In this document: one piece after another, positions 2,907-55,294 of the stretch | Position numbering within the stretch: the first letter of the stretch is position 1 | Layout: each line of letters opens with the position of its first letter | IMG/VR virus record: IMGVR_UViG_3300018080_000098 | Coordinates: 62,001 to 126,000 of that record | Length of the DNA: 64,000 nucleotides | Reading direction: 5' to 3' (one strand) | Made by a program: the position numbers and the translations under genes | Notes under the pieces: model-generated | Database searches by the model: none | What the model was told of the DNA's origin: nothing | Seen by the model: the letters and a program-made list of their open reading frames with translations, nothing else

Positions 2907-3764
2907 CTAGCCGAAAACGAGCATCCCAATATAGTCAACTGTGTTGACAGCAACCTTGATCATGTCTGGTGTACTTGGGAACGTAACCTCGTAAGTGTTT
3001 CTCATCCCTGGCACCGCGGTCGTTGTTAGAGAACCCCATACTCCAGATATGTACGCGTACACCAGTGGTGGGTTCTGATACTGGAAATAAATTTCCGAGC
3101 GTACCTCTTCCAACGGAACCATCACTACGCGCCAGGTAGCACCAGACCCCGATTTCACATCCAGCGCTCGAGTTTGGTACCACCCCTCGGAACCCACCCT
3201 CAGTTTGCTGATATTGTTCATCGGGAGCGCGTACGGCAGGGTATCGTATCGTTCGTTGTTGGGGACCATATCGTGCAAGCTGGGAGCTCGGAAGTCCTCC
3301 ATGTAGACAGTGGAGTTTCCGCCTGCCAACGTGTTGGCGATGTACATTAACGAATCATTTGCTGGAGCTTTCAGCAGGAAGTCTCGAACGGTTGTAGAGA
3401 TGATACGTTTGTCCCGTGTTTCTGCTAGACGGAGCCCATCCCACATCACTTCTGCGATGTGGCATCCATCCTTTAGTTTATCGTACGTGTCGTAGGGATT
3501 GTGGGAAGCCCACATCATGATAGCGGCACCGGGTCCTGCGTCGGTTGCTTCATCGATAACGATCTGGTCGAGGCTAGAGAACACTTGTGAACTGCTGTTA
3601 ACTGCTTGTGGTGTGATAGTATTTTTGGGTACCGGACCTGGGTCTACCCATGTTGAGTCGAACTCGAAGATGTGTTCAATTGAGTTTCCGTTTGCATCTT
3701 TGCCGTAGAGGTGGACCTTCACGACCATGGTGCCAGCACCGGAGGCATCTGCGAGGCCACACAT
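2907..3764 (-). CDS. Putative virion protein, C-terminal part (in frame with 3834..5114 across one TGA)
   Basis: Same frame as the upstream ORF; the 23 intervening codons are open; no Shine-Dalgarno before ATG 3764. Confidence 0.7.
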   Translation of the reverse strand: MCGLADASGAGTMVVKVHLYGKDANGNSIEHIFEFDSTWVDPGPVPKNTITPQAVNSSSQVFSSLDQIVIDEATDAGPGAAIMMWASHNPYDTYDKLKDGCHIAEVMWDGLRLAETRDKRIISTTVRDFLLKAPANDSLMYIANTLAGGNSTVYMEDFRAPSLHDMVPNNERYDTLPYALPMNNISKLRVGSEGWYQTRALDVKSGSGATWRVVMVPLEEVRSEIYFQYQNPPLVYAYISGVWGSLTTTAVPGMRNTYEVTFPSTPDMIKVAVNTVDYIGMLVFG

Positions 3765-3833
3765 GATACGAGCTGGTCCGTAGAGGTCGATGTCGAACGT
3801 GTCGGAAGTGGCTATAGGAGTGAGTAGTTTGTA

Positions 3834-5114
3834 TCAGTATATTACTTGGGGGGACTTGATTAAACTTCCGGTTCCGTCTACCAAGATCTCGTAGATCATG
3901 GGGAACTTCTGGGCATCCGCAAACGCTTCCTGAGTGTTGGTTAGCGCGGTAAACCCAGAGCCCCCCGCGATGATGAGCTCCTCTGCGCTGGGGTTCTTGG
4001 TAGAAAATAGAATTTCATTACTTCCTACTGGGGGCTCGCAGGCATCCACTTTAGTGTAGTACATATGGACCGCCCAATCGGTTGGAACGGTTTCCCATAT
4101 TACTACGCGGTTGGTGCCTACTACGATACTTCCAGCGTAGTCGGTTTCGGTGATTCCGTCTGTTACCCAGACTTTGCCTAATCGTACAGGATAGTTGGTA
4201 AGTTCGACGTATTGTGCGTTTGGGACAGATGTTTTTGACCCGGCGCCATCATCGGTTTTTATGGAAGCATAGGGGATTGCTACTTCACATCGGACACCGG
4301 GAATCTTGGCAATGGATCTATCGTCGGCCACAATCATCCCGTGATCTAGTTGTAGCTGCAGCGGCGAGAAGTCGCCAACGGTTAGATCGTTTTGTGATAG
4401 CGCGTGGGGGTTGGTTGCGGTGGATACGCCGGTTCCGATTTGTCCTCGATGCTCTACGTCTACAGCAGAGAACCAGGGACGGTTCCAGCTGTAGTTTCCT
4501 CGTGTGTGGTCAATCGACATCTGTGTGGTAACTGTAGATGTCAAAGGGTCTTCCACGTTTTGCATAGTGGCGATAGCAATCGGCACTAAGCTGTTGCGCA
4601 CATCCTCGTCGTAGTTTTGATACGCGTCGAGTGTATCGATATCTACTTGTACATCTGCTTCTGACGCACTGTTAGGGGAACCTGGTCTCCAGGTTACTGG
4701 AATAACCGGATCGAGGTAATCATTCAGCTGTGAATCTCCGGGGTCGAGAACGTACCGGAGGTAGACAACGTTTGTGATGCCGACTTCTGGGTCGTCCAGC
4801 TCGATTTGGCGTACTGTGTCGGGGATGAGGATCCACATCCCGTCTTTTGTGACCGCCATACCTGGGCTAATATCAACAGATTCTGTGTTGTTATTATTTA
4901 CTGAGACTGTGAGGGGAACGGTAGTTGTACCTGAAACAGCTGTTTCAGGGTTCTGTTCGCTTACGATTCCGTATGCGGGTGTGGTGAAGTAGTCGGGATG
5001 CCCTATCATGAGCAGCAGTCGCTGCACGAATTCTTCATTGTAGGTGTTGGCTTGATACTGCAGTCTGTCGAGCGACTGTCGAATCGTGTACGTGAGTCCT
5101 GGAATGTTTGCCAT
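3834..5114 (-). CDS. Putative virion/baseplate protein, N-terminal part (probably 735 aa, 2907..5114, with an internal TGA)
   Basis: VSVNNNNTESVDISPGMAVTKDG anchor-type motif and EHRGQIGTGVSTATNPH motif; ends at TGA 3836-3834. Confidence 0.75.
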   Translation of the reverse strand: MANIPGLTYTIRQSLDRLQYQANTYNEEFVQRLLLMIGHPDYFTTPAYGIVSEQNPETAVSGTTTVPLTVSVNNNNTESVDISPGMAVTKDGMWILIPDTVRQIELDDPEVGITNVVYLRYVLDPGDSQLNDYLDPVIPVTWRPGSPNSASEADVQVDIDTLDAYQNYDEDVRNSLVPIAIATMQNVEDPLTSTVTTQMSIDHTRGNYSWNRPWFSAVDVEHRGQIGTGVSTATNPHALSQNDLTVGDFSPLQLQLDHGMIVADDRSIAKIPGVRCEVAIPYASIKTDDGAGSKTSVPNAQYVELTNYPVRLGKVWVTDGITETDYAGSIVVGTNRVVIWETVPTDWAVHMYYTKVDACEPPVGSNEILFSTKNPSAEELIIAGGSGFTALTNTQEAFADAQKFPMIYEILVDGTGSLIKSPQVIY

Positions 5115-5125
5115 GGCGCGTGTCC

Positions 5126-7249
5126 TTAGACGTGGAGGTAGCCGCCGTTGAGCTTACCGTAGAAGCCCAGTTTGGTTTCGAGATCTTTAAGAGAGGGGAA
5201 TAGTGGTTTGATAAAGAGGCCGTTCGCGGCGTAGGTGTGATCTCCCACCATTTGCGAAACGTACTCATGAGACACTGCGGCCACACGAGGAGTAGCGATA
5301 TTCCAATCACCCATCTGTACTTCGCCCGCAGCGGCACCCTTCATGAGAATGTCGATACGTTCTATTGGTTCATCAGTAGATGACAACGTCGCGTTGACTA
5401 GAGTGGGTACTCCTGCAGTGATATTCACGTTGGTCCAATCGTTGGGAAAGAACCTGATGCGCAGTAAAATATCTTGGTCCGAGTTTATCTCGAAGCTCCA
5501 TTGAGCTCCTCCAGTACCGCCAGCCATGCCAGTAATAAGGAAGTTGGGATCTGTGATGCTATACGTGATGGGGTTGTTACCATCTGTGCCTCTAAGCTCA
5601 CTGAAAATTTGGAACGAATTGAAGATGCCAGGGTATTCTGCTCGAGCCAGGAGGTTTGCGCGGTTGATGGCAGCGCTGGTAAGGATAGCCACCTCAACGT
5701 CGGTAGTGGCAGCGCTTATATCGATGGTTTCCAGGTCGTCTGTACCACCACTCATAGTGAATGGTGGTACTCCGGGGGATGCTACCCAGCCGATGCCGAT
5801 TAGGTTTGCTGTGAGCGTGATGAGCTGGTTGCCCTTGATGCTGATTTCATCGTGTGTCAGGTTTACGGTTGTGAGCATTCTGCTTGCGGTAATCTTCAGC
5901 GCAGCCACCGCATTGATTGCTGCCTCCGTTGCTACAGCAACATCAACCGCAAACACCGCGGATGAGATGTCTATTACTCGAGCTCCACTCGTAGCGACGA
6001 AGGTGGAATCGATTTTGTACTCAAACGTGATGCTGGTGCCAAACCCATCATCGAGAACAAAGTTGTCGTTGTTCAGTATTAGTCCAACAGCAGGGCTTAC
6101 AGTGATCCAGCCTGTGGAAGCAGATGTCGGTGTTGGGACGTAGGCGCTGTTCGTTTGGAACTCGAACAGCATAGCGTTTTCACCATCGTCAATGCGGAAC
6201 CAATCGTTGTTCACGATTCCTGCTGGGTCGACAGCAACCATTGAACCAGAAGCGTACGTGAACGGCACTTCTATAATGGGAGCGCAAGTATGCTTGAGCC
6301 ACCATTTTCCTTCATCGTTTAAAAGAGCGAGGAACTTTTCTATATCCGCGTCGTAGTTTATTTCCCCGTCTACTCTGTCCCAGAAAAGAAACTGATCTGC
6401 TTTAATAGGGGTCTCTAAAAATATAGTGTTCTTCTTGATTTCAATTGGTACACCTAAAGCAGATAGAGAAGAATCGTATTTTTGAACATACTGCGTTTCC
6501 TTCATAGTGAAACCGGTAATGAAGGGAGAGGAGCGCCAATCTAGAAGGAATGGTCCTTGTACTTGTTTTACAAAGCTGGCATTAACAGGTAAAGGGAGAA
6601 TTCTGGACTTGTATGCTAGATACGCACGGATTTGGATAATCTCTTCGTCGTCCAGGTCGCGGTGGATTCCGCGGTCCAAAGTAACTTGGTATTGGTAAAT
6701 TCCGTTGACCAAGCTAACGAACTTGTAATCCAGTATGGTGTACTCTTTAAAAGCTGTGGTTATTTCAGGGGTGGAAGATATTGCAATAACGTCTCCCCGC
6801 ACTACGTAGTCGGTGCTATCAATTACGATTATTTTTTTATCTGCTGAGTAGGCACCTTCTACTTTAATGGGGTTGGAGTAGTGGTAAACGGGTTCCCTTT
6901 CAGGGTGGTCTGCAAGAAGCCTACTTCCAAGAACAAGGACGTCATCGATGACGTCGGCCACTTCGTGGAGCTCACGTTCACCTATGGAGATGTATCCTCC
7001 AGCTTCTATCCAGGTTGGGACACGGTTGAGGGTAATGCGGTCTATAAGATATATAGCGTCTTCTTCGAGGCGGAATCTGTTATCGGGTGTGAAGAGGGGC
7101 ATCACAGCGGTGAGTTTTTTCCCGTAGCGCACGTCACCTTTTGCGAAGATGTCGAGGGGCATCGTGATCCCTCGGGGGACGATATGCATCGCCAACCCTT
7201 GGTACATCTGGCGTTGGACTGCGTCCTTTGTTAGCTTGATGATGCCCAT
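5126..7249 (-). CDS. Putative virion structural protein (707 aa) with duplicated internal domain
   Basis: Two copies of NNDxFx[IL]DDG....[LT]FE[FY] and two of ID-IS.A....DV.......AAIN. Confidence 0.75.
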   Translation of the reverse strand: MGIIKLTKDAVQRQMYQGLAMHIVPRGITMPLDIFAKGDVRYGKKLTAVMPLFTPDNRFRLEEDAIYLIDRITLNRVPTWIEAGGYISIGERELHEVADVIDDVLVLGSRLLADHPEREPVYHYSNPIKVEGAYSADKKIIVIDSTDYVVRGDVIAISSTPEITTAFKEYTILDYKFVSLVNGIYQYQVTLDRGIHRDLDDEEIIQIRAYLAYKSRILPLPVNASFVKQVQGPFLLDWRSSPFITGFTMKETQYVQKYDSSLSALGVPIEIKKNTIFLETPIKADQFLFWDRVDGEINYDADIEKFLALLNDEGKWWLKHTCAPIIEVPFTYASGSMVAVDPAGIVNNDWFRIDDGENAMLFEFQTNSAYVPTPTSASTGWITVSPAVGLILNNDNFVLDDGFGTSITFEYKIDSTFVATSGARVIDISSAVFAVDVAVATEAAINAVAALKITASRMLTTVNLTHDEISIKGNQLITLTANLIGIGWVASPGVPPFTMSGGTDDLETIDISAATTDVEVAILTSAAINRANLLARAEYPGIFNSFQIFSELRGTDGNNPITYSITDPNFLITGMAGGTGGAQWSFEINSDQDILLRIRFFPNDWTNVNITAGVPTLVNATLSSTDEPIERIDILMKGAAAGEVQMGDWNIATPRVAAVSHEYVSQMVGDHTYAANGLFIKPLFPSLKDLETKLGFYGKLNGGYLHV

Positions 7250-7259
7250 AAGTACAGCT

Positions 7260-7691
7260 CTAGTCCTGGTGGTGTTCGAGGTAGCCGATGAAGAGATCTA
7301 GTGTGTAAGTGCCTGTAGCGCCTACGGTTGCAGCTATCATCGAGCCAACCACCAGGTTTTTGAGGTCAACAGGACCCCAAAGAAAGTAACTATTACGCCA
7401 GCTTGGATTCCAGTAGGCGTGGAGGGTTAGCAGGAGGTGCGCAGCAGCGCCGGTCCAGATACCCATACAGAAGTAGCACTTCATGAATTTCTGGAAGAAC
7501 TGCTGCACGAAACTCAAGGGAAACTGTAGAAGCCAGCGTCGAAGAGGGAGGACCCCAGATTCTCGGATGTACTTTTCGTCGGTGGGGTCTTGGAGGAAGG
7601 CTTTGGTAGACACACCAAAGATGGTGGCGTCTGCAGCTAGGAAGGCCAATCCGTAGGAAAGGAAAACGAATAGCAGGAACGAGAGTGTCAT
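7260..7691 (-). CDS. DUF1360-like membrane protein
   Basis: N-terminal TM helix, CYFCMGIW motif (CxxCxG[IV]W) and further hydrophobic helices. Confidence 0.65.
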   Translation of the reverse strand: MTLSFLLFVFLSYGLAFLAADATIFGVSTKAFLQDPTDEKYIRESGVLPLRRWLLQFPLSFVQQFFQKFMKCYFCMGIWTGAAAHLLLTLHAYWNPSWRNSYFLWGPVDLKNLVVGSMIAATVGATGTYTLDLFIGYLEHHQD

Positions 7692-7876
7692 TGAGAAGGC
7701 GGTGCTGGGTTATCACGGATGTTGTTGACCACTTCTACGATCAGGTCGAAGTCTCTCCAAGTGAGAGCCACGGACCCTCCGTGGTCATCCTTGATGAGCA
7801 CCTCGTCCTCTGAAACGAACACTTCAGGGCAATTGCGTCCTCGACAGCATGCTGTCCACTGTTTGTTTTCCGGCAT
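7688..7876 (-). CDS. Small hypothetical protein (possibly DUF397-like fold)
   Basis: CCRGRNCPEV....VLIKDDHGGSVALT..DF pattern; ATGA overlap with the next gene. Confidence 0.7.
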   Translation of the reverse strand: MPENKQWTACCRGRNCPEVFVSEDEVLIKDDHGGSVALTWRDFDLIVEVVNNIRDNPAPPSQ

Positions 7877-7879
7877 CTT

Positions 7880-8461
7880 CTACCAGCGCATGATGTGAGC
7901 GTTCGAGCTCGTTTGCATCCCGTCACCCTTGGTGACCGCGTACAGCACCCCCACCACAAGCCCAATACCGATAGTTACCCCAACTGCAAGCCCCATCAAC
8001 CCCTTGTTGCGCTCCCACCACGTGTTCCGAGCTCGGACCTTCGCCTCGATGTGCTCGAGCGCGGACTTGTTGATGAGCTTCCGTATCTCCAGATTCTGCC
8101 GCGCCGCCTCGAGCTCCTTACGCCTCCGGTCCCTTTCTGCCTTGATGGCTACGTAATACCGGGCCTTGTCTGCGTCGATCACTATCCCCGCATGCGGGGC
8201 CAGATCCCCCTTCTTTACTACGCTGCTCTTGCCCTCCGAGTAGCCCTCTCGTTTCTCAATAGGACCACTTACCAATGAACCGCGAGCTCCTACTTCCTTC
8301 TTCGCTTGCTCGTACGTCATGACAGGAGGCACCTTCACTGTCGCGCACCCCGACGACCCCACCACACCCAACGTAGCAGCAAACGCGATAATTACTGCCC
8401 ACCAAGACAGAAACTGCCTACAGCAACTTGTTGAGCTCTTCCAGACGCTCTTGCTCATCAT
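7880..8461 (-). CDS. Putative spanin-like lipoprotein with additional C-terminal TM helix
   Basis: Hydrophobic signal ending GSSG-C (imperfect lipobox), a coiled-coil middle and C-terminal TM LMGLAVGVTIGIGLVVGVLYAV. AAGGAG SD; overlaps the 3' end of 8418..8825. Confidence 0.6.
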   Translation of the reverse strand: MMSKSVWKSSTSCCRQFLSWWAVIIAFAATLGVVGSSGCATVKVPPVMTYEQAKKEVGARGSLVSGPIEKREGYSEGKSSVVKKGDLAPHAGIVIDADKARYYVAIKAERDRRRKELEAARQNLEIRKLINKSALEHIEAKVRARNTWWERNKGLMGLAVGVTIGIGLVVGVLYAVTKGDGMQTSSNAHIMRW

Positions 8462-8825
8462 CTATCTCCTTGATCTCCTCCAGCTTCTTGACCACAGCCT
8501 CCTCCGCCTTCTTGGCCTCAGCTACTTTGATCTTCTCCTCGATGTCCGCCTTCGCCGTCTCATGCTTCGTCTTCGCAATAACGTCCTTCACGCCCTTCAC
8601 TGGACCCTTCCCCTTCAACAGATAAAGGATCCCGAAGACTCCTGCAACAGCAGCACCAATAGCAGTGATGATGCCCACCACCCACAGAAGAACTTTTTTG
8701 CCAGTAGACCCCGTAGCTTTCTTGAGGTCTTGCTTGAGCTCCTCGCTCACCTTGGGCGTATCAGCCTTCTTCTCTTCTGTTTTAGGGGTTTCTTCCGTCT
8801 TGGGAGGGGTTAATGTGTCAGGCAT
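8418..8825 (-). CDS. Putative i-spanin-like single-pass membrane protein
   Basis: One TM (VLLWVVGIITAIGAAVAGVFGILYLL) followed by an E/K-rich coiled coil; lies between the holin-like and lipoprotein genes. Confidence 0.55.
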   Translation of the reverse strand: MPDTLTPPKTEETPKTEEKKADTPKVSEELKQDLKKATGSTGKKVLLWVVGIITAIGAAVAGVFGILYLLKGKGPVKGVKDVIAKTKHETAKADIEEKIKVAEAKKAEEAVVKKLEEIKEIDDEQERLEELNKLL

Positions 8826-8873
8826 CGTAATATTCCCTTTGGTAAGGGGAGCTCGTAGTCCCCCAGAGAGCCG

Positions 8874-9677
8874 CTACTTATCGTTCTTGGGCTCGTCTTT
8901 TTTCTCCTCTGGTTTCTCTTCCGGCTTTTCCTCAGGCGCTGCGGTCGTCTTTGACTCACCGTTTCCTTCAGTCCGCTTGAGTCCCAGCGCAGACTCGATT
9001 ACATCACCCAAGTAGGCAGATCCCTTCTCCGCGAGCCCAGAGTCTACCAGGTACTTGTTGGCTGTCTTTATGGCCAGGTCGAGCTTCTCAGCGCTGTCCA
9101 TCGGGTTGTCTTTGAGCTTGTGAGCAGCTTCCTCGGCCTTCCCGATACCGAACATCGCCGCTTTCAAAACCATGTCGTCAACCATCTGCTTGCTCTGCAG
9201 ATTTGAAATCTTGAACTTCTTGTAGAGCCACGAAGTGAAGATGGGGATGAAGACGGTCAGGAAGGCACCTAGAAGGTAGAGAATCACCTGGAGGATCCAT
9301 CCTCCGATGACGCTACCCTTCGAGTCTTTCTTAGCCGCTGGAGCAGCCTTGGCAGGCTGAGCTGGCACCATTGCAGCAGGGGCAGCCATAGTCGGCACAG
9401 CGGCCATCGCGGGAGCCATAACTGCTGGTGCAGCCATCGCGGCAGCAGGCGCCATTACTGCAGTCATTACCGCTGGTTTCGGCGCTGTCTTCGGCTTCTT
9501 TACTGCTGGACGAGGGCGCGGTTTGGGAGCAGCTCGCATCGCAGGAGCTGCCATTGCTGGAGCCATCGGAGCAGCTCGCATTGCAGGCGCCGGAGCTCCC
9601 ATCGGCTGCGCGTCGACTGGAGCGCTCAGTACAGCTACCAATCCTAGGGTAGCAAACATCAATGTGATCTTCTTCAT
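8874..9677 (-). CDS. Holin-like protein (LL-H-type C-terminal domain) with signal peptide and Met/Ala/Pro low-complexity region
   Basis: Signal peptide ...APVDA-Q, then AMAAP repeats, one TM, and KAAMFGIGKAEEAA...SAEKLDLA...VIESALG resembling LL-H family holins. Confidence 0.6.
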   Translation of the reverse strand: MKKITLMFATLGLVAVLSAPVDAQPMGAPAPAMRAAPMAPAMAAPAMRAAPKPRPRPAVKKPKTAPKPAVMTAVMAPAAAMAAPAVMAPAMAAVPTMAAPAAMVPAQPAKAAPAAKKDSKGSVIGGWILQVILYLLGAFLTVFIPIFTSWLYKKFKISNLQSKQMVDDMVLKAAMFGIGKAEEAAHKLKDNPMDSAEKLDLAIKTANKYLVDSGLAEKGSAYLGDVIESALGLKRTEGNGESKTTAAPEEKPEEKPEEKKDEPKNDK

Positions 9678-9699
9678 GGGATTGTTCTCCTCTTCCCTG

Positions 9700-9709
9700 A
9701 TTTTACAAG
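9700..9709 (-). promoter_or_regulatory. Putative promoter motif A (CTTGTAAAAT)
   Basis: Identical to the 1374 and 43830 copies; same spacing to the downstream ATG as the 1374 copy. Confidence 0.55.
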
Positions 9710-9723
9710 ATGAGCTCTGGTTC

Positions 9724-10701
9724 CTACGCTGTAGGCTGCTCGGTAGCTGGAGCTCCAGGCGCTTGCCCGTTCTTGCCTCGTTGTCTATACTTAGTCAGTA
9801 CCGTCTGCCACATCAGACCGTTGTTGAACGCGAAGATGACTCCGCGTAGGGACAGCTTGTCTGCCTCCTTCTCGAGACCCTGCTGGATCGAGTAATACAC
9901 CATCGCGGCGATGATGAAGCTCATCACAATGAGATGCGGCTGAAATTTGACAGACAGCCCTTTACTCTTCTGGTCTGCGTAGTCCCAGTAGTACGTCCCC
10001 AGCACACCCAGAACCAACGCCAGGAAGTAGAACAGCGCAGCATACCTGTCCTTGAAAGGCTTCTTCTTTACCGTGGTCTTCGTGACCACCTTCTCATCAG
10101 ATCCAGGCTTCTCCTGAAGCCACCAGAAACTTTGCCGCATCACCTTTGGCCGCTTCTTGGGATGTACCCGCAGATGCTTGTGGTGGAACTTCCGTATGTG
10201 TGCGCGTACCTTCTGCTTAGCCTGGTACCGGATGAACTTCTCCATCGCCTGCTTTTCATGTACACGAACGTCGGCCATCCACGCTTTCACCGCAGGTGAT
10301 TCAAGCCCCGTACATTGCACAATCCCATTTTGGATAAGCGTGACCTCGTCGGACGCGCAACGATTGAGCGCTGCTACATCTGTTTCTTTGGAACCGTCGG
10401 AGATGACCAGCTTGAGGACAGGTTCTGGCTTTGGCGGCTCAGGTGCCGTGACCTTTGCAGGACTGTATACTACTTTTTGTTCGGTGACCTTTTCGTTCCC
10501 ATTGTCGACAGTACTCACTATCACAACCCCAACTATGAGGGGGATCACGATAGCCAGTGCTCCGATGACAACCGCATGCCGCTGCATCCACGTGGCAGAT
10601 GGATTTTCCTCTTCTTCCTTGTTTTTGAACTTGTCTGCGAGGTATACTCCCAGGACAAACAGTCCCATGAGAGCACCCCACAGTACGGTGGAGCTGCCCA
10701 T
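9724..10701 (-). CDS. Multi-pass membrane protein (~5 TM) of unknown function
   Basis: Two N-terminal TMs, a soluble region with two Cys and a basic/His-rich stretch, and three C-terminal hydrophobic helices ending FAFNNGLMWQTVL. Confidence 0.8.
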   Translation of the reverse strand: MGSSTVLWGALMGLFVLGVYLADKFKNKEEEENPSATWMQRHAVVIGALAIVIPLIVGVVIVSTVDNGNEKVTEQKVVYSPAKVTAPEPPKPEPVLKLVISDGSKETDVAALNRCASDEVTLIQNGIVQCTGLESPAVKAWMADVRVHEKQAMEKFIRYQAKQKVRAHIRKFHHKHLRVHPKKRPKVMRQSFWWLQEKPGSDEKVVTKTTVKKKPFKDRYAALFYFLALVLGVLGTYYWDYADQKSKGLSVKFQPHLIVMSFIIAAMVYYSIQQGLEKEADKLSLRGVIFAFNNGLMWQTVLTKYRQRGKNGQAPGAPATEQPTA

Positions 10702-10704
10702 CTG

Positions 10705-11595
10705 CTACTCCTCAGCTTCCAGTATCTGCTTTGCTACTTCAATGCCAATATCTCTACGTTTCCTTACTAGTTTAGGATCGAAGTCCAGCCCGCTTCCTAA
10801 TCCATGTGGTGGCATGAAGATGCGGATGTCTAGTTTTTTCTTTCCTTCAGCGTCGGGATGTCCAGCTTCGACAAGCTTGTTGCAGAGCAGTGCGTACTTC
10901 ACATCTCGTAGGAATATTTCAGAGCTCATGAGGTCAACGCAACGCATTCCAATGGTGGCGGCATTACGTTTAGTGCCTAACCAGTTGTCGTGAGGATCTT
11001 TCTTACCCGTTACGGGAGGGCCAGTGAGGATGACGTCTATGGCTTCACAGCCAGCATCAATAGCACTCTGAAGAGGAGTCACACAACGATAGCCACCATC
11101 CATCCAGAAATCGTCTTTAATCCATCTACCAAGTAGGTATGGTTCAAGGCCACTGGATGCGCAAACCCACTTCCACAGGTTTTTAGTATTTTGGTCGGCT
11201 TCATAGTAATGGCCACCGCCATACGCGCAACAGCCAATTCGTATCTCTCTACCCGAAGCCTGGGCCAGTTCATCTTTTACGCGTTCCTTGATTAGCTCTT
11301 GGAGAGCCTTGGAGTTGTAGAATGCGTCTTTAGCTATCAGACCAGCTAGCATTCCCCAGATCCAGCGTTTGTAGATGTCCTTATTTCCGGTGAGTCCGAG
11401 CCAGATGTCATCTAGTGCATTGACAGCGTCATCCAGCACCCCGATGGGGTACTGACTAATCATTGATGCCTGGAGAGCTCCTACGCTTACTCCGCTAACA
11501 AACTCGTACTCGTAGTTATTCCTTACCAGCTCGGTTAGTACTCCTTGGGTGAAAGCGCCTTTGCTTCCACCCCCACTCATAACAAGACCGCGCAT
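10705..11595 (-). CDS. Patatin-like phospholipase
   Basis: Oxyanion motif SGGGSKG, nucleophile elbow GVSVG (GxSxG) and catalytic DGG. Start is likely ATG 11595 (MRGLV) after GGGAGA. Confidence 0.93.
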   Translation of the reverse strand: MRGLVMSGGGSKGAFTQGVLTELVRNNYEYEFVSGVSVGALQASMISQYPIGVLDDAVNALDDIWLGLTGNKDIYKRWIWGMLAGLIAKDAFYNSKALQELIKERVKDELAQASGREIRIGCCAYGGGHYYEADQNTKNLWKWVCASSGLEPYLLGRWIKDDFWMDGGYRCVTPLQSAIDAGCEAIDVILTGPPVTGKKDPHDNWLGTKRNAATIGMRCVDLMSSEIFLRDVKYALLCNKLVEAGHPDAEGKKKLDIRIFMPPHGLGSGLDFDPKLVRKRRDIGIEVAKQILEAEE

Positions 11596-11608
11596 TATCT
11601 TTCTCCCG

Positions 11609-12589
11609 TTACTCCGATGTAGCATGCCATCGGAAGAGCATCATAAATCCGTTCATCTCACACGGTTCCGTTCCTGCGTAGTTTTTCTCTAGAACCATAC
11701 CTAGTTTCCAGTGACGGCTTATCCATTCTACTAAATATGCATCAATTTCAAACACGCCTCTAGGTGAACCTAGGCTAACGTTGCGACAGAGGTAAATGGG
11801 GGGTGGTTCTACAAGTAATATTTGGATTCTTTGATCGTACTTTCCGAGTTCTGCAGAGTCGGTGTAAATAGTTATCTCTTCAGTTCTTTCGTTTACCACC
11901 CACGGACCGGAGCTGTCTGGGATAGGAACCGCAGCAGAGAGGTCGACATCGTATTCTCCATCTCCTGCTGCTGGGATAACGATGTAATTGTACGGGGCAT
12001 CCATCAGGTTGCAGTTACCGGTGCCGCCCGGGTTGGGAGTAACAGAGCTGACTGCAAACTTTACGTAGACCGAAAAGAGATCTATTCCACTGAAGCCACT
12101 GACGGGCTTCCAATTTATCTCGCCATCGTGGAGGTAGACGCCTTCCGCAAATTGGAGTTCTATATTTTTTGCTCCAGTCTCTTCAGCAGCGTAGACGATG
12201 TGAGCAACAGTACCTTCACCACGTTTAACGGGTGGTCCCAGATCGTCTCCGCAAGAGGTATACCACGTGTAAGATCCTCCTGGAGCTGGTGTTGGGACAA
12301 TCACCTGTTTCCCATCGCTGTCGAAACGAGCGCCTTCAATTTTAACTTCTACTGCGTCGTCTTCCAGTGGCTCTCCACTATGATTAGCAACAACAGTGTC
12401 TAGTCTGTTCCTGTTTTCACCATCTAGTTCGTTCTTGAACCAGATATTGCAATCGTCGTCAACAATCTCAATGTAGTCTAAGGCAACAGTGATTTCGCTT
12501 TCCTCTATCTCCTCAGTTAAACGAGGAATGTCTACCTTGTGATTTGGAAAGTCGTTTTGGATTGAGTATGTGTATTTTGTTGCAGCCAT
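11609..12589 (-). CDS. Putative virion accessory protein (326 aa)
   Basis: N-terminal ~70 aa paralogous to 12594..13241 (YTYSI..DFP...V.I..L.EEI..S.I..AL......D.CNI.F..ELD). Confidence 0.75.
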   Translation of the reverse strand: MAATKYTYSIQNDFPNHKVDIPRLTEEIEESEITVALDYIEIVDDDCNIWFKNELDGENRNRLDTVVANHSGEPLEDDAVEVKIEGARFDSDGKQVIVPTPAPGGSYTWYTSCGDDLGPPVKRGEGTVAHIVYAAEETGAKNIELQFAEGVYLHDGEINWKPVSGFSGIDLFSVYVKFAVSSVTPNPGGTGNCNLMDAPYNYIVIPAAGDGEYDVDLSAAVPIPDSSGPWVVNERTEEITIYTDSAELGKYDQRIQILLVEPPPIYLCRNVSLGSPRGVFEIDAYLVEWISRHWKLGMVLEKNYAGTEPCEMNGFMMLFRWHATSE

Positions 12590-12593
12590 TTTA

Positions 12594-13241
12594 CTACACC
12601 TGCATCAGCTCAATACGAGCTGCGCTCAAGCTTGCTGTTTGCGATTTATGCGAGGAGGCAAACTGAATTGCTATACTGTGTGAACCTTCCGTAAGAGCTC
12701 GCTTAGTAAAAAAACTATGCTCAATTGAGGCCCCCTTCCAACCACCATCACCCATACTCAAAGCTGGACTTACTTCTTTTTCTAACAATACGGTAACCCC
12801 GTCCAAAACAATTCTGTATTTTACATCTTTGTTGTACTTGGCTGCGCTTAGATTGAAGCCCCAATGGATATAATAGCTTCCACTGGGAATGAGAGGAACG
12901 TTGAGCGTAAGTGTATCAACATATTCAGTTCTGTTTGTTTTGTACTCTTTTTCCGATTCCGCGAACCACAGTTCTTCTTCTGGTGTTGGGTTCCCATCAT
13001 GGCTACCAATAATACTAGAGCCGCTAGGAGGGGAGGTGTTACCGTCTAAAACAGTCTTGTCATCTGTGTCTAGCTCAGTAACAAATATTATGTTGCACAC
13101 ATCCCCTTTTGTACTGACACCTCGTAGGGCTGCTTTGATAGTGCTTACTCTTATTTCCTCTTCCAGCAGTGCTATGTTCACTTCTCCAAGAGGGAAATCT
13201 GAAGAGATGCTGTACGTGTATTCAAACCCAGGTCCCAACAT
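12594..13241 (-). CDS. Putative virion accessory protein (215 aa)
   Basis: Shares its N-terminal domain with 11609..12589; beta-sandwich-like C-terminus; TGATG coupling with the upstream fibre gene. Confidence 0.75.
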   Translation of the reverse strand: MLGPGFEYTYSISSDFPLGEVNIALLEEEIRVSTIKAALRGVSTKGDVCNIIFVTELDTDDKTVLDGNTSPPSGSSIIGSHDGNPTPEEELWFAESEKEYKTNRTEYVDTLTLNVPLIPSGSYYIHWGFNLSAAKYNKDVKYRIVLDGVTVLLEKEVSPALSMGDGGWKGASIEHSFFTKRALTEGSHSIAIQFASSHKSQTASLSAARIELMQV

Positions 13242-54751: not shown

Positions 54752-55294
54752 TTATGGGTACGACACGAAGGCTCGTATCCATGACCGAAGTTCTTTTCTG
54801 ACATCGTTCTCTTCTTTTTGTTTGTACTGTGCTTCCATCACGCCATCAAACATGCGGTGGAAGTATTCATTTCGGTCTATGTCTACGAGACGTCCAAGCG
54901 ACCTGGTCATTGCTTGGAGGACAGGTTGCATACCTGTTTGGATAGATAATCCTCCGCTGTCTAGGGTTCCTGAGAAGCTATCGAGGAAGTCGTTGAACTT
55001 TCCTGTGATAGTCAGCAATTCTGCAGCTACGAGCTCGCTGTAGAGAACTTGTTGCTCGGTTACTTCTTTGAGCAGCGCGTTGTAATCTTTCGTACGTTGG
55101 CTTGATTCTCCTTTGGTCAGCTGCTTCAGGTAGGCGACAGCCTTCTTTTTAGTAGTAGAGGATAGGAGAATTAGGGCATCTTCTGTGGACGCCGGGATAG
55201 CTTGCGATACACCATTCACTGAATCGTAGTAGGAGGGTGTTACCTGCCGTCTGTTGGCTACTAGTTTTTTCAGTTGGTTATCGGAGAGTGCCAT
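54752..55294 (-). CDS. Hypothetical helical protein (180 aa) in the baseplate operon
   Basis: Co-oriented ORF downstream of motif B. Confidence 0.75.
   Translation of the reverse strand: MALSDNQLKKLVANRRQVTPSYYDSVNGVSQAIPASTEDALILLSSTTKKKAVAYLKQLTKGESSQRTKDYNALLKEVTEQQVLYSELVAAELLTITGKFNDFLDSFSGTLDSGGLSIQTGMQPVLQAMTRSLGRLVDIDRNEYFHRMFDGVMEAQYKQKEENDVRKELRSWIRAFVSYP

What the first reader, a model, noticed from the sequence alone, without database searches (positions are those of the whole stretch)
7260..11595. Atypical lysis-like cassette headed by a patatin phospholipase, with no recognisable endolysin
Seen: seven consecutive non-fibre genes embedded among virion genes: patatin (intact GGGxKG/GxSxG/DGG), a 5-TM protein, an LL-H-like holin, a single-TM coiled-coil protein, an overlapping lipoprotein, a small Cys protein and a DUF1360-like membrane protein. 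Established: canonical diderm lysis uses holin-endolysin-spanin, and patatins act as membrane-destroying effectors (e.g. CBASS CapV). Inference: this may be a phospholipase-assisted lysis or membrane-remodelling system. The only peptidoglycan-hydrolase motif I see in the window is the virion M23 domain about 50 kb away.
Basis: partly seen in the sequence, partly recalled or inferred. Interest (0 to 1): 0.72.

Follow-up and report, generated by a model that had tools for sequence, protein, structure and literature searches.

The report
Patatin beside a phage lysis-type module
In this 350-kb sediment phage, an intact patatin phospholipase that belongs with the tail-fibre genes happens to sit next to a separate holin/spanin-like membrane-gene module, and the "missing" cell-wall enzyme is probably a divergent secreted lysozyme-like protein encoded far away, so this is mostly an ordinary dispersed lysis system plus a phospholipase of unknown role.

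Summary
The seven genes exist as described, on the minus strand of a 349,793-bp phage genome with terminal repeats. The patatin is real: Pfam E = 1.8e-19, and its GGG, GxSxG and DGG motifs are invariant in 45 relatives. The 267-aa protein belongs to the LL-H holin family only through its relatives. The "lipoprotein" also has a conserved C-terminal membrane helix, which is the unimolecular-spanin layout. The virion M23 domain was not found.

The idea of one cassette headed by the patatin does not hold up. The patatin's steady partner is the upstream 326-aa fibre-type protein, adjacent in 6 of 6 closer relatives. The holin/spanin-like module lies within 10 kb of the patatin in only 3 of 80 viral loci. 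In one phage with a 74%-identical patatin, the module is at least 69 kb away on the same contig.

The genome also encodes a secreted, cysteine-rich protein with lytic-transglycosylase motifs and a lysozyme-like predicted fold, about 194 kb away. That makes it a candidate endolysin.

Best reading: two neighbouring modules and a dispersed but conventional lysis system. The patatin's role remains open; a part in lysis is possible but not supported by gene linkage. Phage WO already carries a published, untested "patatin lytic cassette" hypothesis.

The parts
11609..12589 (-). w_326: fibre-module protein with an N-terminal adaptor domain of about 70 aa (shared with the neighbouring 215-aa protein) and a C-terminal jelly-roll domain. 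It is the patatin's conserved upstream partner.
10705..11595 (-). Patatin-like phospholipase, 296 aa from M11 (the longest ORF runs to 11625). It has no signal peptide, no membrane helix and no extra regulatory domain.
   Evidence: PF01734 E = 1.8e-19. The catalytic Ser and Asp and the oxyanion Gly residues are invariant in 45 sequences. Nearest solved relatives are PlpD (E = 1e-18) and CapV (E = 1e-13). There are 174 relatives in IMG/VR, mostly on large phage contigs.
9724..10701 (-). p325: multi-pass membrane protein with a loop of about 160 aa. It is a variable accessory gene between the patatin and the core membrane module.
   Evidence: Hydropathy scan. Present in L005 and L006, absent in L003 and L105. 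No significant family match.
8874..9677 (-). p267: holin-family (LL-H type) protein, made of a signal peptide, about 100 aa rich in Ala, Pro and Met, one membrane helix and a 120-aa charged C-terminal domain.
   Evidence: Pfam Holin_LLH E = 0.017, below the cut-off. PHROG holin 2609 E = 8e-4. 37 of 55 relatives hit Holin_LLH, and PHROG holin families 2609, 6918 and 608 are also hit. Conserved in L003, L005, L006 and L105.
8418..8825 (-). p135: single-pass membrane protein (helix at about 45-67) with a charged, helical-looking C-terminal tail. It could be a second holin, an antiholin or an i-spanin-like partner.
   Evidence: Hydropathy scan. Only weak sub-threshold hits to DUF948 here and to Holin-X in an orthologue. 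Conserved next to p267 and p193 in L003, L005, L006 and L105. Analogous genes occupy the same position in L011 and L012.
7880..8461 (-). p193: candidate unimolecular spanin, with an N-terminal lipoprotein-type signal (Cys39 of the ORF), a periplasmic domain without Cys, and a C-terminal Gly-rich membrane helix. It overlaps p135 by 44 nt.
   Evidence: In an alignment of 19 homologues the Cys is near-invariant, position -1 is G, S or A in all, and the C-terminal helix is conserved. The defining features of u-spanins are taken from PMC6139136. No family match.
7688..7876 (-). p62: small soluble protein with a conserved W-x-x-CC-x(3-5)-C-P motif. Function unknown.
   Evidence: Conserved in L003, L005 and L006. 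No family match.
7260..7691 (-). p143: DUF1360-like small membrane protein, the last gene of the membrane module.
   Evidence: DUF1360 at E = 1e-3 here and 4e-5 to 5e-4 in four orthologues, one of them above the gathering score. PHROG 781, of unknown function.
5126..7249 (-). w_707: conserved large protein that always follows the membrane module, probably a virion protein. It marks the module's fixed downstream anchor.
   Evidence: 45-77% identical homologues follow the module in L003, L005, L006 and L105. No family match.

Best explanation
Two independent gene modules lie side by side here.

MODULE 1 is the tail end of the fibre gene array. It holds w_326 (adaptor domain plus jelly-roll) followed by a minimal, catalytically intact, cytoplasmic patatin phospholipase.

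MODULE 2 is a lysis-type membrane module. It holds an LL-H-family holin-like protein (p267), a single-pass partner (p135), an overlapping lipoprotein with a C-terminal membrane helix (p193, unimolecular-spanin layout), a small Cys protein and a DUF1360-like protein. p325 is a variable extra.

The cell-wall enzyme is not missing. The best candidate is a Sec-exported, very basic, 384-aa lytic-transglycosylase-like protein with many invariant cysteines, at genome position 267,104-268,258. It is followed two genes later by its own single-pass membrane protein.

Proposed mechanism (inferred, not shown):
1. Late in infection the transglycosylase-like enzyme accumulates in the periplasm.
2. p267, perhaps with p135, permeabilises or depolarises the inner membrane and sets the timing.
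3. p193 bridges the inner and outer membranes and disrupts the outer membrane once the wall is cut.

The patatin is made from the same late transcript region. As a gene it travels with the fibre genes, not with the lysis genes. My best guess is that it is a soluble accessory lipase acting on host membrane lipids at or after release. One example would be clearing receptor-bearing membrane debris. It is probably not an obligatory lysis component.
For: GENOME AND CONTEXT
- The genome is a complete 350-kb phage record.
- The region sits in a virion gene context.

PATATIN AND ITS PARTNER
- The patatin is intact and conserved.
- w_326 is adjacent to the patatin in 6 of 6 closer relatives and in 15 of 80 viral loci.
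- Fibre or adaptor-domain proteins lie within 6 kb upstream in 52 of 80 loci.

WHAT LIES DOWNSTREAM OF THE PATATIN VARIES
- The membrane module, in L003, L005, L006, L022, L024 and L026.
- The SLT-like block, in L002/L023 and L027.
- Laminin_G_3 fibre-like proteins, in L004.
- Neck and tail genes, in L007.

THE MEMBRANE MODULE IS A SEPARATE UNIT
- It stays with w_707 and the genes after it even where the patatin is about 153 kb away.
- Holin-family membership of p267 comes through its relatives.
- The u-spanin features of p193 are conserved in 19 homologues (criteria).
- A similar three-gene layout follows short LL-H-like homologues in L011 and L012.
- This is the only dense cluster of membrane-protein genes in the genome.

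SLT-LIKE PROTEIN
- The motifs RMES, CGMTQ and NRYNQG are invariant in 8 relatives.
- The protein atlas gives a feature score of 0.94 and a structural TM-score of 0.82 to SLT clusters.
Against: - No function was tested.
- p267 itself scores below every curated holin threshold. It is also unusually long for a holin, with a signal peptide.
- p193 matches no known spanin family.
- No endolysin lies next to the module.
- Patatin and p325 are separated by only 3 nt. In both known arrangements the patatin abuts lysis-type genes, either the membrane module or the SLT block. That fits a lysis link better than my reading allows.
- The role I suggest for the patatin is a guess.
Confidence: 0.55

Rival explanations
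1. Phospholipase-assisted lysis. In this reading the cytoplasmic patatin is a true lysis effector. It degrades inner-membrane phospholipids late in infection and acts together with the holin-like and spanin-like proteins.
For: - The patatin is adjacent and nearly abutting (3-nt gap) to the membrane genes in the window and in L005/L022, L006/L024, L026 and L003.
- In the other arrangement the patatin is followed within 3.5-6.5 kb by the SLT-like candidate endolysin block (L023, L027).
- The enzyme is minimal and PlpD-like, with no regulatory domain, so it may be constitutively active.
- The catalytic residues are invariant.
- There is a precedent hypothesis in phage WO (PMC9203015).
Against: - Only 3 of 80 viral patatin loci have the module within 10 kb.
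- The two are about 153 kb apart on one contig of a close relative.
- Fibre or depolymerase-like genes are inserted between them in L003 and L006.
- More distant patatins sit among replication, metabolic or small unknown genes.
- A candidate wall-degrading enzyme exists, so no substitute for an endolysin is needed.
Confidence: 0.2
2. Virion-associated or entry-associated lipase. In this reading the patatin is carried on or with the fibre apparatus, perhaps through w_326, and attacks host envelope lipids during adsorption or penetration.
For: - The w_326-patatin gene pair is conserved inside fibre arrays.
- In L007 the pair lies between capsid and sheath genes.
- w_326 has a virion-type jelly-roll fold and an adaptor domain shared with neighbouring fibre proteins.
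Against: - The patatin lacks the adaptor domain that the neighbouring fibre proteins share, and no fusion of the two was seen in 80 loci.
- There is no virion proteomics for this uncultured lineage.
- At 29-37% identity most patatins have unrelated upstream neighbours.
Confidence: 0.15
3. The membrane module is not a lysis cassette. It could instead serve superinfection exclusion, receptor masking by a lipoprotein encoded next to the fibre genes (in the manner of T5 Llp or Cor), or envelope remodelling during assembly.
For: - The module is next to fibre genes.
- No endolysin is adjacent to it.
- p267 is atypical for a holin.
- p193 and p135 match no known spanin family.
- In L011 and L012 the gene at p193's position has a signal peptide but no lipobox Cys.
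Against: - p267's family hits holin models repeatedly.
- The combination of a lipobox and a C-terminal membrane helix, with no periplasmic Cys, is the diagnostic u-spanin layout.
- No other membrane-gene cluster in the genome could serve as the lysis cassette.
Confidence: 0.1

Closest known systems
Phage WO (Wolbachia) putative patatin-based lytic cassette (Bordenstein & Bordenstein 2022, PMC9203015)
   Same: A patatin-like phospholipase is encoded beside a small single-pass, coiled-coil 'holin-like' protein and another membrane-anchored protein, directly next to tail genes. It has been proposed, but not tested, as a lysis or exit system.
   Different: - WO lacks any endolysin, and its host lacks detectable peptidoglycan. 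This genome has a candidate secreted transglycosylase.
- WO's third gene is an ankyrin protein. No ankyrin domain was found here.
- In WO the cassette is reported as conserved. Here the patatin and the membrane module separate in relatives.
- The two patatin lineages were not compared directly.
Dispersed lysis genes of T4-like and other large phages (established knowledge: in T4 the holin gene t lies next to tail-fibre genes 37/38, while the endolysin e and the spanins pseT.3/pseT.2 are elsewhere)
   Same: The holin-type gene is embedded next to fibre genes, and the endolysin is encoded far away.
   Different: There is no sequence relationship. Here the spanin-like gene stays with the holin-like gene.
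Unimolecular spanins (T1 gp11 type; Kongari et al. 2018, PMC6139136)
   Same: p193 has an N-terminal lipoprotein signal, a C-terminal membrane helix and no periplasmic cysteine, and it lies next to a holin-family gene.
   Different: - It has no sequence similarity to any of the 13 described families, as far as family libraries can show.
- The region next to the membrane helix looks like a charged helix rather than the beta-rich domain of gp11. Secondary structure was not computed here.
- It overlaps an upstream single-pass gene, as o-spanin genes do.
LL-H type holins (Pfam PF09682, PHROGs 2609, 6918 and 608)
   Same: The membrane helix and charged C-terminal domain of p267 are homologous, by transitive evidence.
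   Different: p267 and most of its close kin carry an extra signal peptide and a segment of about 100 aa rich in Ala, Pro and Met on the periplasmic side. p267 itself is below the curated threshold.
Bacterial patatins PlpD (type Vd secreted lipase) and CapV (CBASS effector)
   Same: They share the patatin fold and the catalytic Ser-Asp dyad. They are the nearest solved sequences, at E = 1e-18 and 1e-13.
   Different: The phage protein has no secretion or barrel domain as in PlpD. No nucleotide-sensing region was identified, and no CBASS genes were seen nearby.

Membership tests
Patatin-like phospholipase (PF01734) | Profile match above the curated cut-off | tested here: met
   71.2 bits against a cut-off of 27.7, E = 1.8e-19. 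The whole-genome search finds the same single locus.
Patatin-like phospholipase (PF01734) | Gly-rich oxyanion motif, GxSxG nucleophile and DG[GA] catalytic Asp | tested here: met
   SGGGSKG, GVSVG (Ser47) and DGG (Asp176) are present. They are invariant columns in 45 sequences.
Patatin-like phospholipase (PF01734) | Lipid acyl-hydrolase activity | not testable with these tools
   Needs an enzyme assay.
Holin, LL-H type (PF09682) | Profile match above the curated cut-off for this protein | tested here: not met
   16.0 bits against a cut-off of 24.9, E = 0.017.
Holin, LL-H type (PF09682) | Homologues of the same domain belong to the family | tested here: met
   37 of 55 representatives found with p267 residues 118-267 hit PF09682 at E <= 0.01, best 2.8e-8. 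PHROG holin families are also hit.
Holin (functional class) | Encoded next to an endolysin | tested here: not met
   No wall hydrolase lies in the window. The candidate is about 194 kb away.
Holin (functional class) | Timed lethal permeabilisation of the inner membrane | not testable with these tools
   Needs induction or complementation assays.
Unimolecular spanin | N-terminal outer-membrane lipoprotein signal with a lipobox Cys | tested here: met
   The Cys is present in at least 90% of 19 homologues, position -1 is G, S or A in all, and position +2 is never Asp. Position -3 fits the consensus in only about half (consensus).
Unimolecular spanin | C-terminal transmembrane helix | tested here: met
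   A conserved Gly-rich hydrophobic segment lies at residues 155-175 in all 19 homologues.
Unimolecular spanin | No periplasmic cysteine | tested here: met
   There is none after Cys39 in p193. PMC6139136 reports this for all 58 u-spanins it surveyed.
Unimolecular spanin | Complements an Rz/Rz1 defect or disrupts the outer membrane | not testable with these tools
   Needs a genetic test.
Two-component spanin (i-spanin p135 plus o-spanin p193) | The o-spanin is a small lipoprotein without a membrane helix, and periplasmic Cys residues provide disulfide links | tested here: not met
   p193 has a C-terminal membrane helix. Neither protein has a periplasmic Cys. Only the overlapping gene arrangement fits.
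Phage WO-type patatin lytic cassette | Conserved linkage of patatin with a holin-like gene, and no endolysin in the genome | tested here: not met
   Linkage is seen in 3 of 80 viral loci and is broken on one contig of a close relative. An SLT-like candidate is present.
Lytic transglycosylase / lysozyme-like superfamily (the 384-aa protein outside the window) | Sequence-profile match | tested here: not met
   There is no Pfam, PHROG or PDB sequence hit.
Lytic transglycosylase / lysozyme-like superfamily (the 384-aa protein outside the window) | Family-1 motifs (E-S, G-x-x-Q, Y-N-x-G) and a lysozyme-like fold | tested here: inconclusive
DUF1360 (PF07098) | Profile match above the cut-off | tested here: inconclusive
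   19.2 bits against a cut-off of 21 here. Four orthologues score 20.5-23.8 bits, and one passes.

The most novel reading that the evidence does not exclude
A conserved family of minimal patatin phospholipases, found in at least 174 IMG/VR contigs and mostly in phages over 100 kb, could be a fourth, lipid-attacking component of phage exit. In that case it would work alongside holin, endolysin and spanin, and in this lineage it would be physically joined to the holin/spanin module. This would be the first tractable counterpart, in a host that presumably has a cell wall, of the untested phage WO 'patatin lysis' idea.
Probability: 0.2. Interest if true: 0.75.

Novelty: new variant of a known kind. 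Interest (0 to 1): 0.4.

Why it matters
If the patatin did take part in lysis, phage exit would involve enzymatic attack on membrane lipids. That has been proposed for Wolbachia phage WO but never shown.

As the evidence stands, the useful results are more modest:
- Huge phages carry a widespread, catalytically intact patatin family that is tied to their fibre genes and has no known role.
- This lineage offers an unusual holin-family protein with a periplasmic extension.
- It also offers a new candidate unimolecular spanin.
- It has a highly divergent, disulfide-rich, secreted transglycosylase that standard profiles miss.

The last point is a reminder that "no endolysin found" in a jumbo phage usually reflects the limits of detection.

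Tried and rejected
- DNA search of the region against GenBank phages found nothing.
- A single-protein scan of IMG/VR with the patatin found nothing. The alignment-based scan worked.
- Whole-genome Pfam searches for SLT, GH24 lysozyme, Amidase_2, M23, M15_4 and GH108 were all empty. They also missed the SLT-like protein, so these negatives are weak. GH25, GH19, Amidase_3, CHAP and NlpC/P60 were not searched.
- Complex prediction for w_326 with the patatin gave no verdict (score 0.00). This counts neither for nor against binding.
- Profile comparison of the p193 family with the positionally analogous L012 protein, and BLAST of p135 against its L012 analogue, showed no significant similarity. 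The similarity of the three-gene layout is therefore architectural only.
- The sigma-70 promoter and terminator scan found nothing above chance, so no transcript boundary between the patatin and the membrane genes could be shown or excluded.
- The protein atlas was uninformative for w_326 and p193.
- The patatin homologue of Rhodothermus phage RM378 sits among replication genes, which did not help.
- No RNA sequencing run holds this sequence. Only the source sediment DNA run does, so there are no expression data.
- A regular-expression search for the M23 motif across the proteome found nothing.

Full report
WHERE THE WINDOW LIES
The window is bases 62,001-126,000 of a 349,793-bp virus record with terminal repeats, estimated to be complete. 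The genome has 53.7% G+C and 18 tRNA genes. It comes from a sediment metagenome. Every substantial ORF in the window is on the minus strand. The region is structural. It contains a tail sheath (PHROG E = 6e-107), a tail-spike-like protein and large fibre-like proteins.

THE OBSERVATION
Seven tightly packed genes occupy 7260-11625.
- The first is a genuine patatin, PF01734 at E = 1.8e-19. The gene callers behind the public protein collection start it at M11, giving 296 aa. In an alignment of 45 family members the Gly-rich loop, the GxSxG serine and the DGG aspartate are invariant. The nearest solved sequences are PlpD and CapV. The protein has no signal peptide, no membrane helix and no extra domain.
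- p325 is a multi-pass membrane protein.
- p267 has a signal peptide, about 100 residues rich in Ala, Pro and Met, one membrane helix and a charged tail.
- p135 has one membrane helix.
- p193 overlaps p135 by 44 nt. It has both a lipoprotein-type signal and a C-terminal membrane helix.
- p62 is a small Cys protein.
- p143 is a small membrane protein.
Only about 69 of 462 predicted proteins in the genome have a hydrophobic segment by the same crude test. No other cluster of this kind exists, so the cluster is not a chance run.

FAMILY CALLS
- p267 is below the Pfam threshold for Holin_LLH (E = 0.017). It is marginal for a PHROG holin (E = 8e-4).
- An exhaustive HMMER search with its C-terminal 150 residues found 55 representatives. 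Of these, 37 hit Holin_LLH on their own (best E = 2.8e-8), and several hit PHROG holin families. Homology to that family is therefore reasonable, but it says nothing about function.
- In p193's 19 homologues the lipobox Cys is near-invariant and the C-terminal helix is conserved. There is no periplasmic Cys. These are the defining features of unimolecular spanins as set out by Kongari et al. (PMC6139136).
- p143 and four orthologues all give borderline DUF1360 matches.

IS THE PATATIN PART OF THE MEMBRANE MODULE?
I fetched the neighbourhoods of six relatives whose patatins are 48-77% identical and compared them by BLAST.
- The 326-aa protein just upstream (w_326) is the immediate neighbour in 6 of 6.
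- The membrane genes follow the patatin in only three (L003, L005, L006). In two of those, other genes are inserted between them: a 505-aa capsule-depolymerase-like protein plus a 99-aa protein in L003, and a 353-aa protein in L006.
- In L004 the patatin is followed by Laminin_G_3 proteins.
- In L007 it lies between capsid and sheath genes.
- In L002 it is followed by homologues of genome region 262-268 kb.

A wider scan of IMG/VR found 174 relatives. In the 80 best loci, local profile searches gave these counts:
- The p267 and p193 families lie within 10 kb of the patatin in only 3 loci. All three are close kin, and at least two are the same phages as L005 and L006.
- A w_326-family protein is present in 23 loci, and it is immediately upstream in 15.
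- Fibre or adaptor-domain proteins lie within 6 kb upstream in 52.

The reciprocal scan with the p193 family was decisive. On contig IMGVR_UViG_3300017971_000190 (221,679 bp) the module p267-p135-p193-p143-707 lies at about 38-42 kb. The w_326-patatin pair, with a patatin 74% identical to the window's, lies at about 192-193 kb. The module keeps its downstream partners (w_707 and the next two genes), and the patatin keeps its upstream partners. The junction in the window is therefore a lineage-specific meeting of two modules.

More distant patatins (25-37% identity) sit among small unknown, metabolic or replication genes.

WHAT IS w_326?
- With 45 homologues, AlphaFold gives a confident model, pLDDT 93.6. 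It has a small alpha/beta N-terminal domain and a jelly-roll.
- The N-terminal domain is shared with the neighbouring 215-aa protein.
- Foldseek finds nothing convincing.
- This fits a virion-surface or sugar-binding protein, no more.
- Complex prediction with the patatin returned no verdict.

THE "MISSING" ENDOLYSIN
Six Pfam endolysin families are absent from the genome by profile search. However, the gene that follows the patatin block in L002 led to a 384-aa protein at genome position 267,104-268,258.
- It has a signal peptide and is very basic.
- It has many cysteines that are invariant across 8 relatives.
- It carries the motifs RMES, CGMTQ and NRYNQG in the order typical of family-1 lytic transglycosylases.
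- Sequence libraries do not recognise it.
- The protein atlas places it among SLT clusters, with a feature score of 0.94 and a structural TM-score of 0.82.
- Foldseek's own hits are lysozymes, but they are not significant.
I rate it a probable wall-degrading enzyme and the best endolysin candidate. A 149-aa single-pass protein lies two genes downstream, and this order is kept in L023 and L027.

It is noteworthy that in L023 and L027 the fibre-w_326-patatin block directly abuts this SLT block. In both known arrangements, then, the patatin borders lysis-type genes. This is the main reason I keep the lysis rival at 0.2.

MECHANISM AND COMPARISON
The simplest reading is a conventional three-step lysis with dispersed genes, as is familiar from T4, where the holin gene also lies beside fibre genes (established knowledge).
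- Shown here: gene order, conservation, motifs and architectures.
- Inferred: every functional step.

The closest published idea is the patatin-based lytic cassette of phage WO, which is also untested (PMC9203015). The present case differs from it in three ways: it has a candidate endolysin, it lacks the ankyrin gene, and it loses the linkage in relatives.

VERDICT
The locus is a new variant of known kinds rather than a new system. The open and moderately interesting question is what a conserved, active-looking phospholipase is doing at the end of the fibre gene array in so many very large phages.

Noticed in passing
window 2907-5114 (minus strand); TGA at 3836-3834: The 426-aa and 285-aa ORFs form one gene of 733-756 aa in three relatives. 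In the window they are split by a single in-frame TGA that aligns with a conserved Cys (PQV[IVF]Y-C-[YH]K), and conserved sequence continues straight after it. This could be a nonsense mutation, an assembly error, or a Cys/Sec-type recoding. TGA otherwise ends 84 of 365 longer ORFs.
   Followed up: partly
outside the window: G000:C1:267104-269538 (L008:7104-9538): This may be a second small lysis cluster. It holds the secreted, Cys-rich SLT-like 384-aa protein, then a 222-aa protein, then a 149-aa single-pass protein with a charged, helical-looking C-terminal tail. The order is conserved in L023 and L027.
   Followed up: partly
window 12594-13241 and 11609-12589; L003:5911-7014: An N-terminal domain of about 70 aa (Y-T-Y-S-I-x-x-D-F-P...) is shared by several neighbouring fibre-region proteins. 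It occurs three times in one 367-aa protein of L003, and it also exists as a stand-alone 72-aa viral protein family in the atlas. It looks like a modular attachment domain.
   Followed up: partly
L056:10001-13152 and L077:9104-10861: Two huge-phage contigs each carry two patatin genes of this family close together, about 1.3 kb apart in L056 and directly adjacent in L077.
   Followed up: no
L011:526-1651 and L012:1018-2231: Short LL-H-type holin homologues are followed by a coiled-coil protein with an N-terminal membrane helix. An overlapping gene (41 nt overlap) follows, whose product has a signal peptide without a lipobox Cys and a C-terminal membrane helix. The layout matches p267-p135-p193, but there is no detectable sequence similarity.
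   Followed up: partly
window 54752-55294 (minus strand): This 180-aa ORF has a weak, sub-threshold match to a STAND NTPase domain (nSTAND1, E = 3.5e-4, 20.8 bits against a cut-off of 27.1) in the middle of the virion gene block.
   Followed up: no
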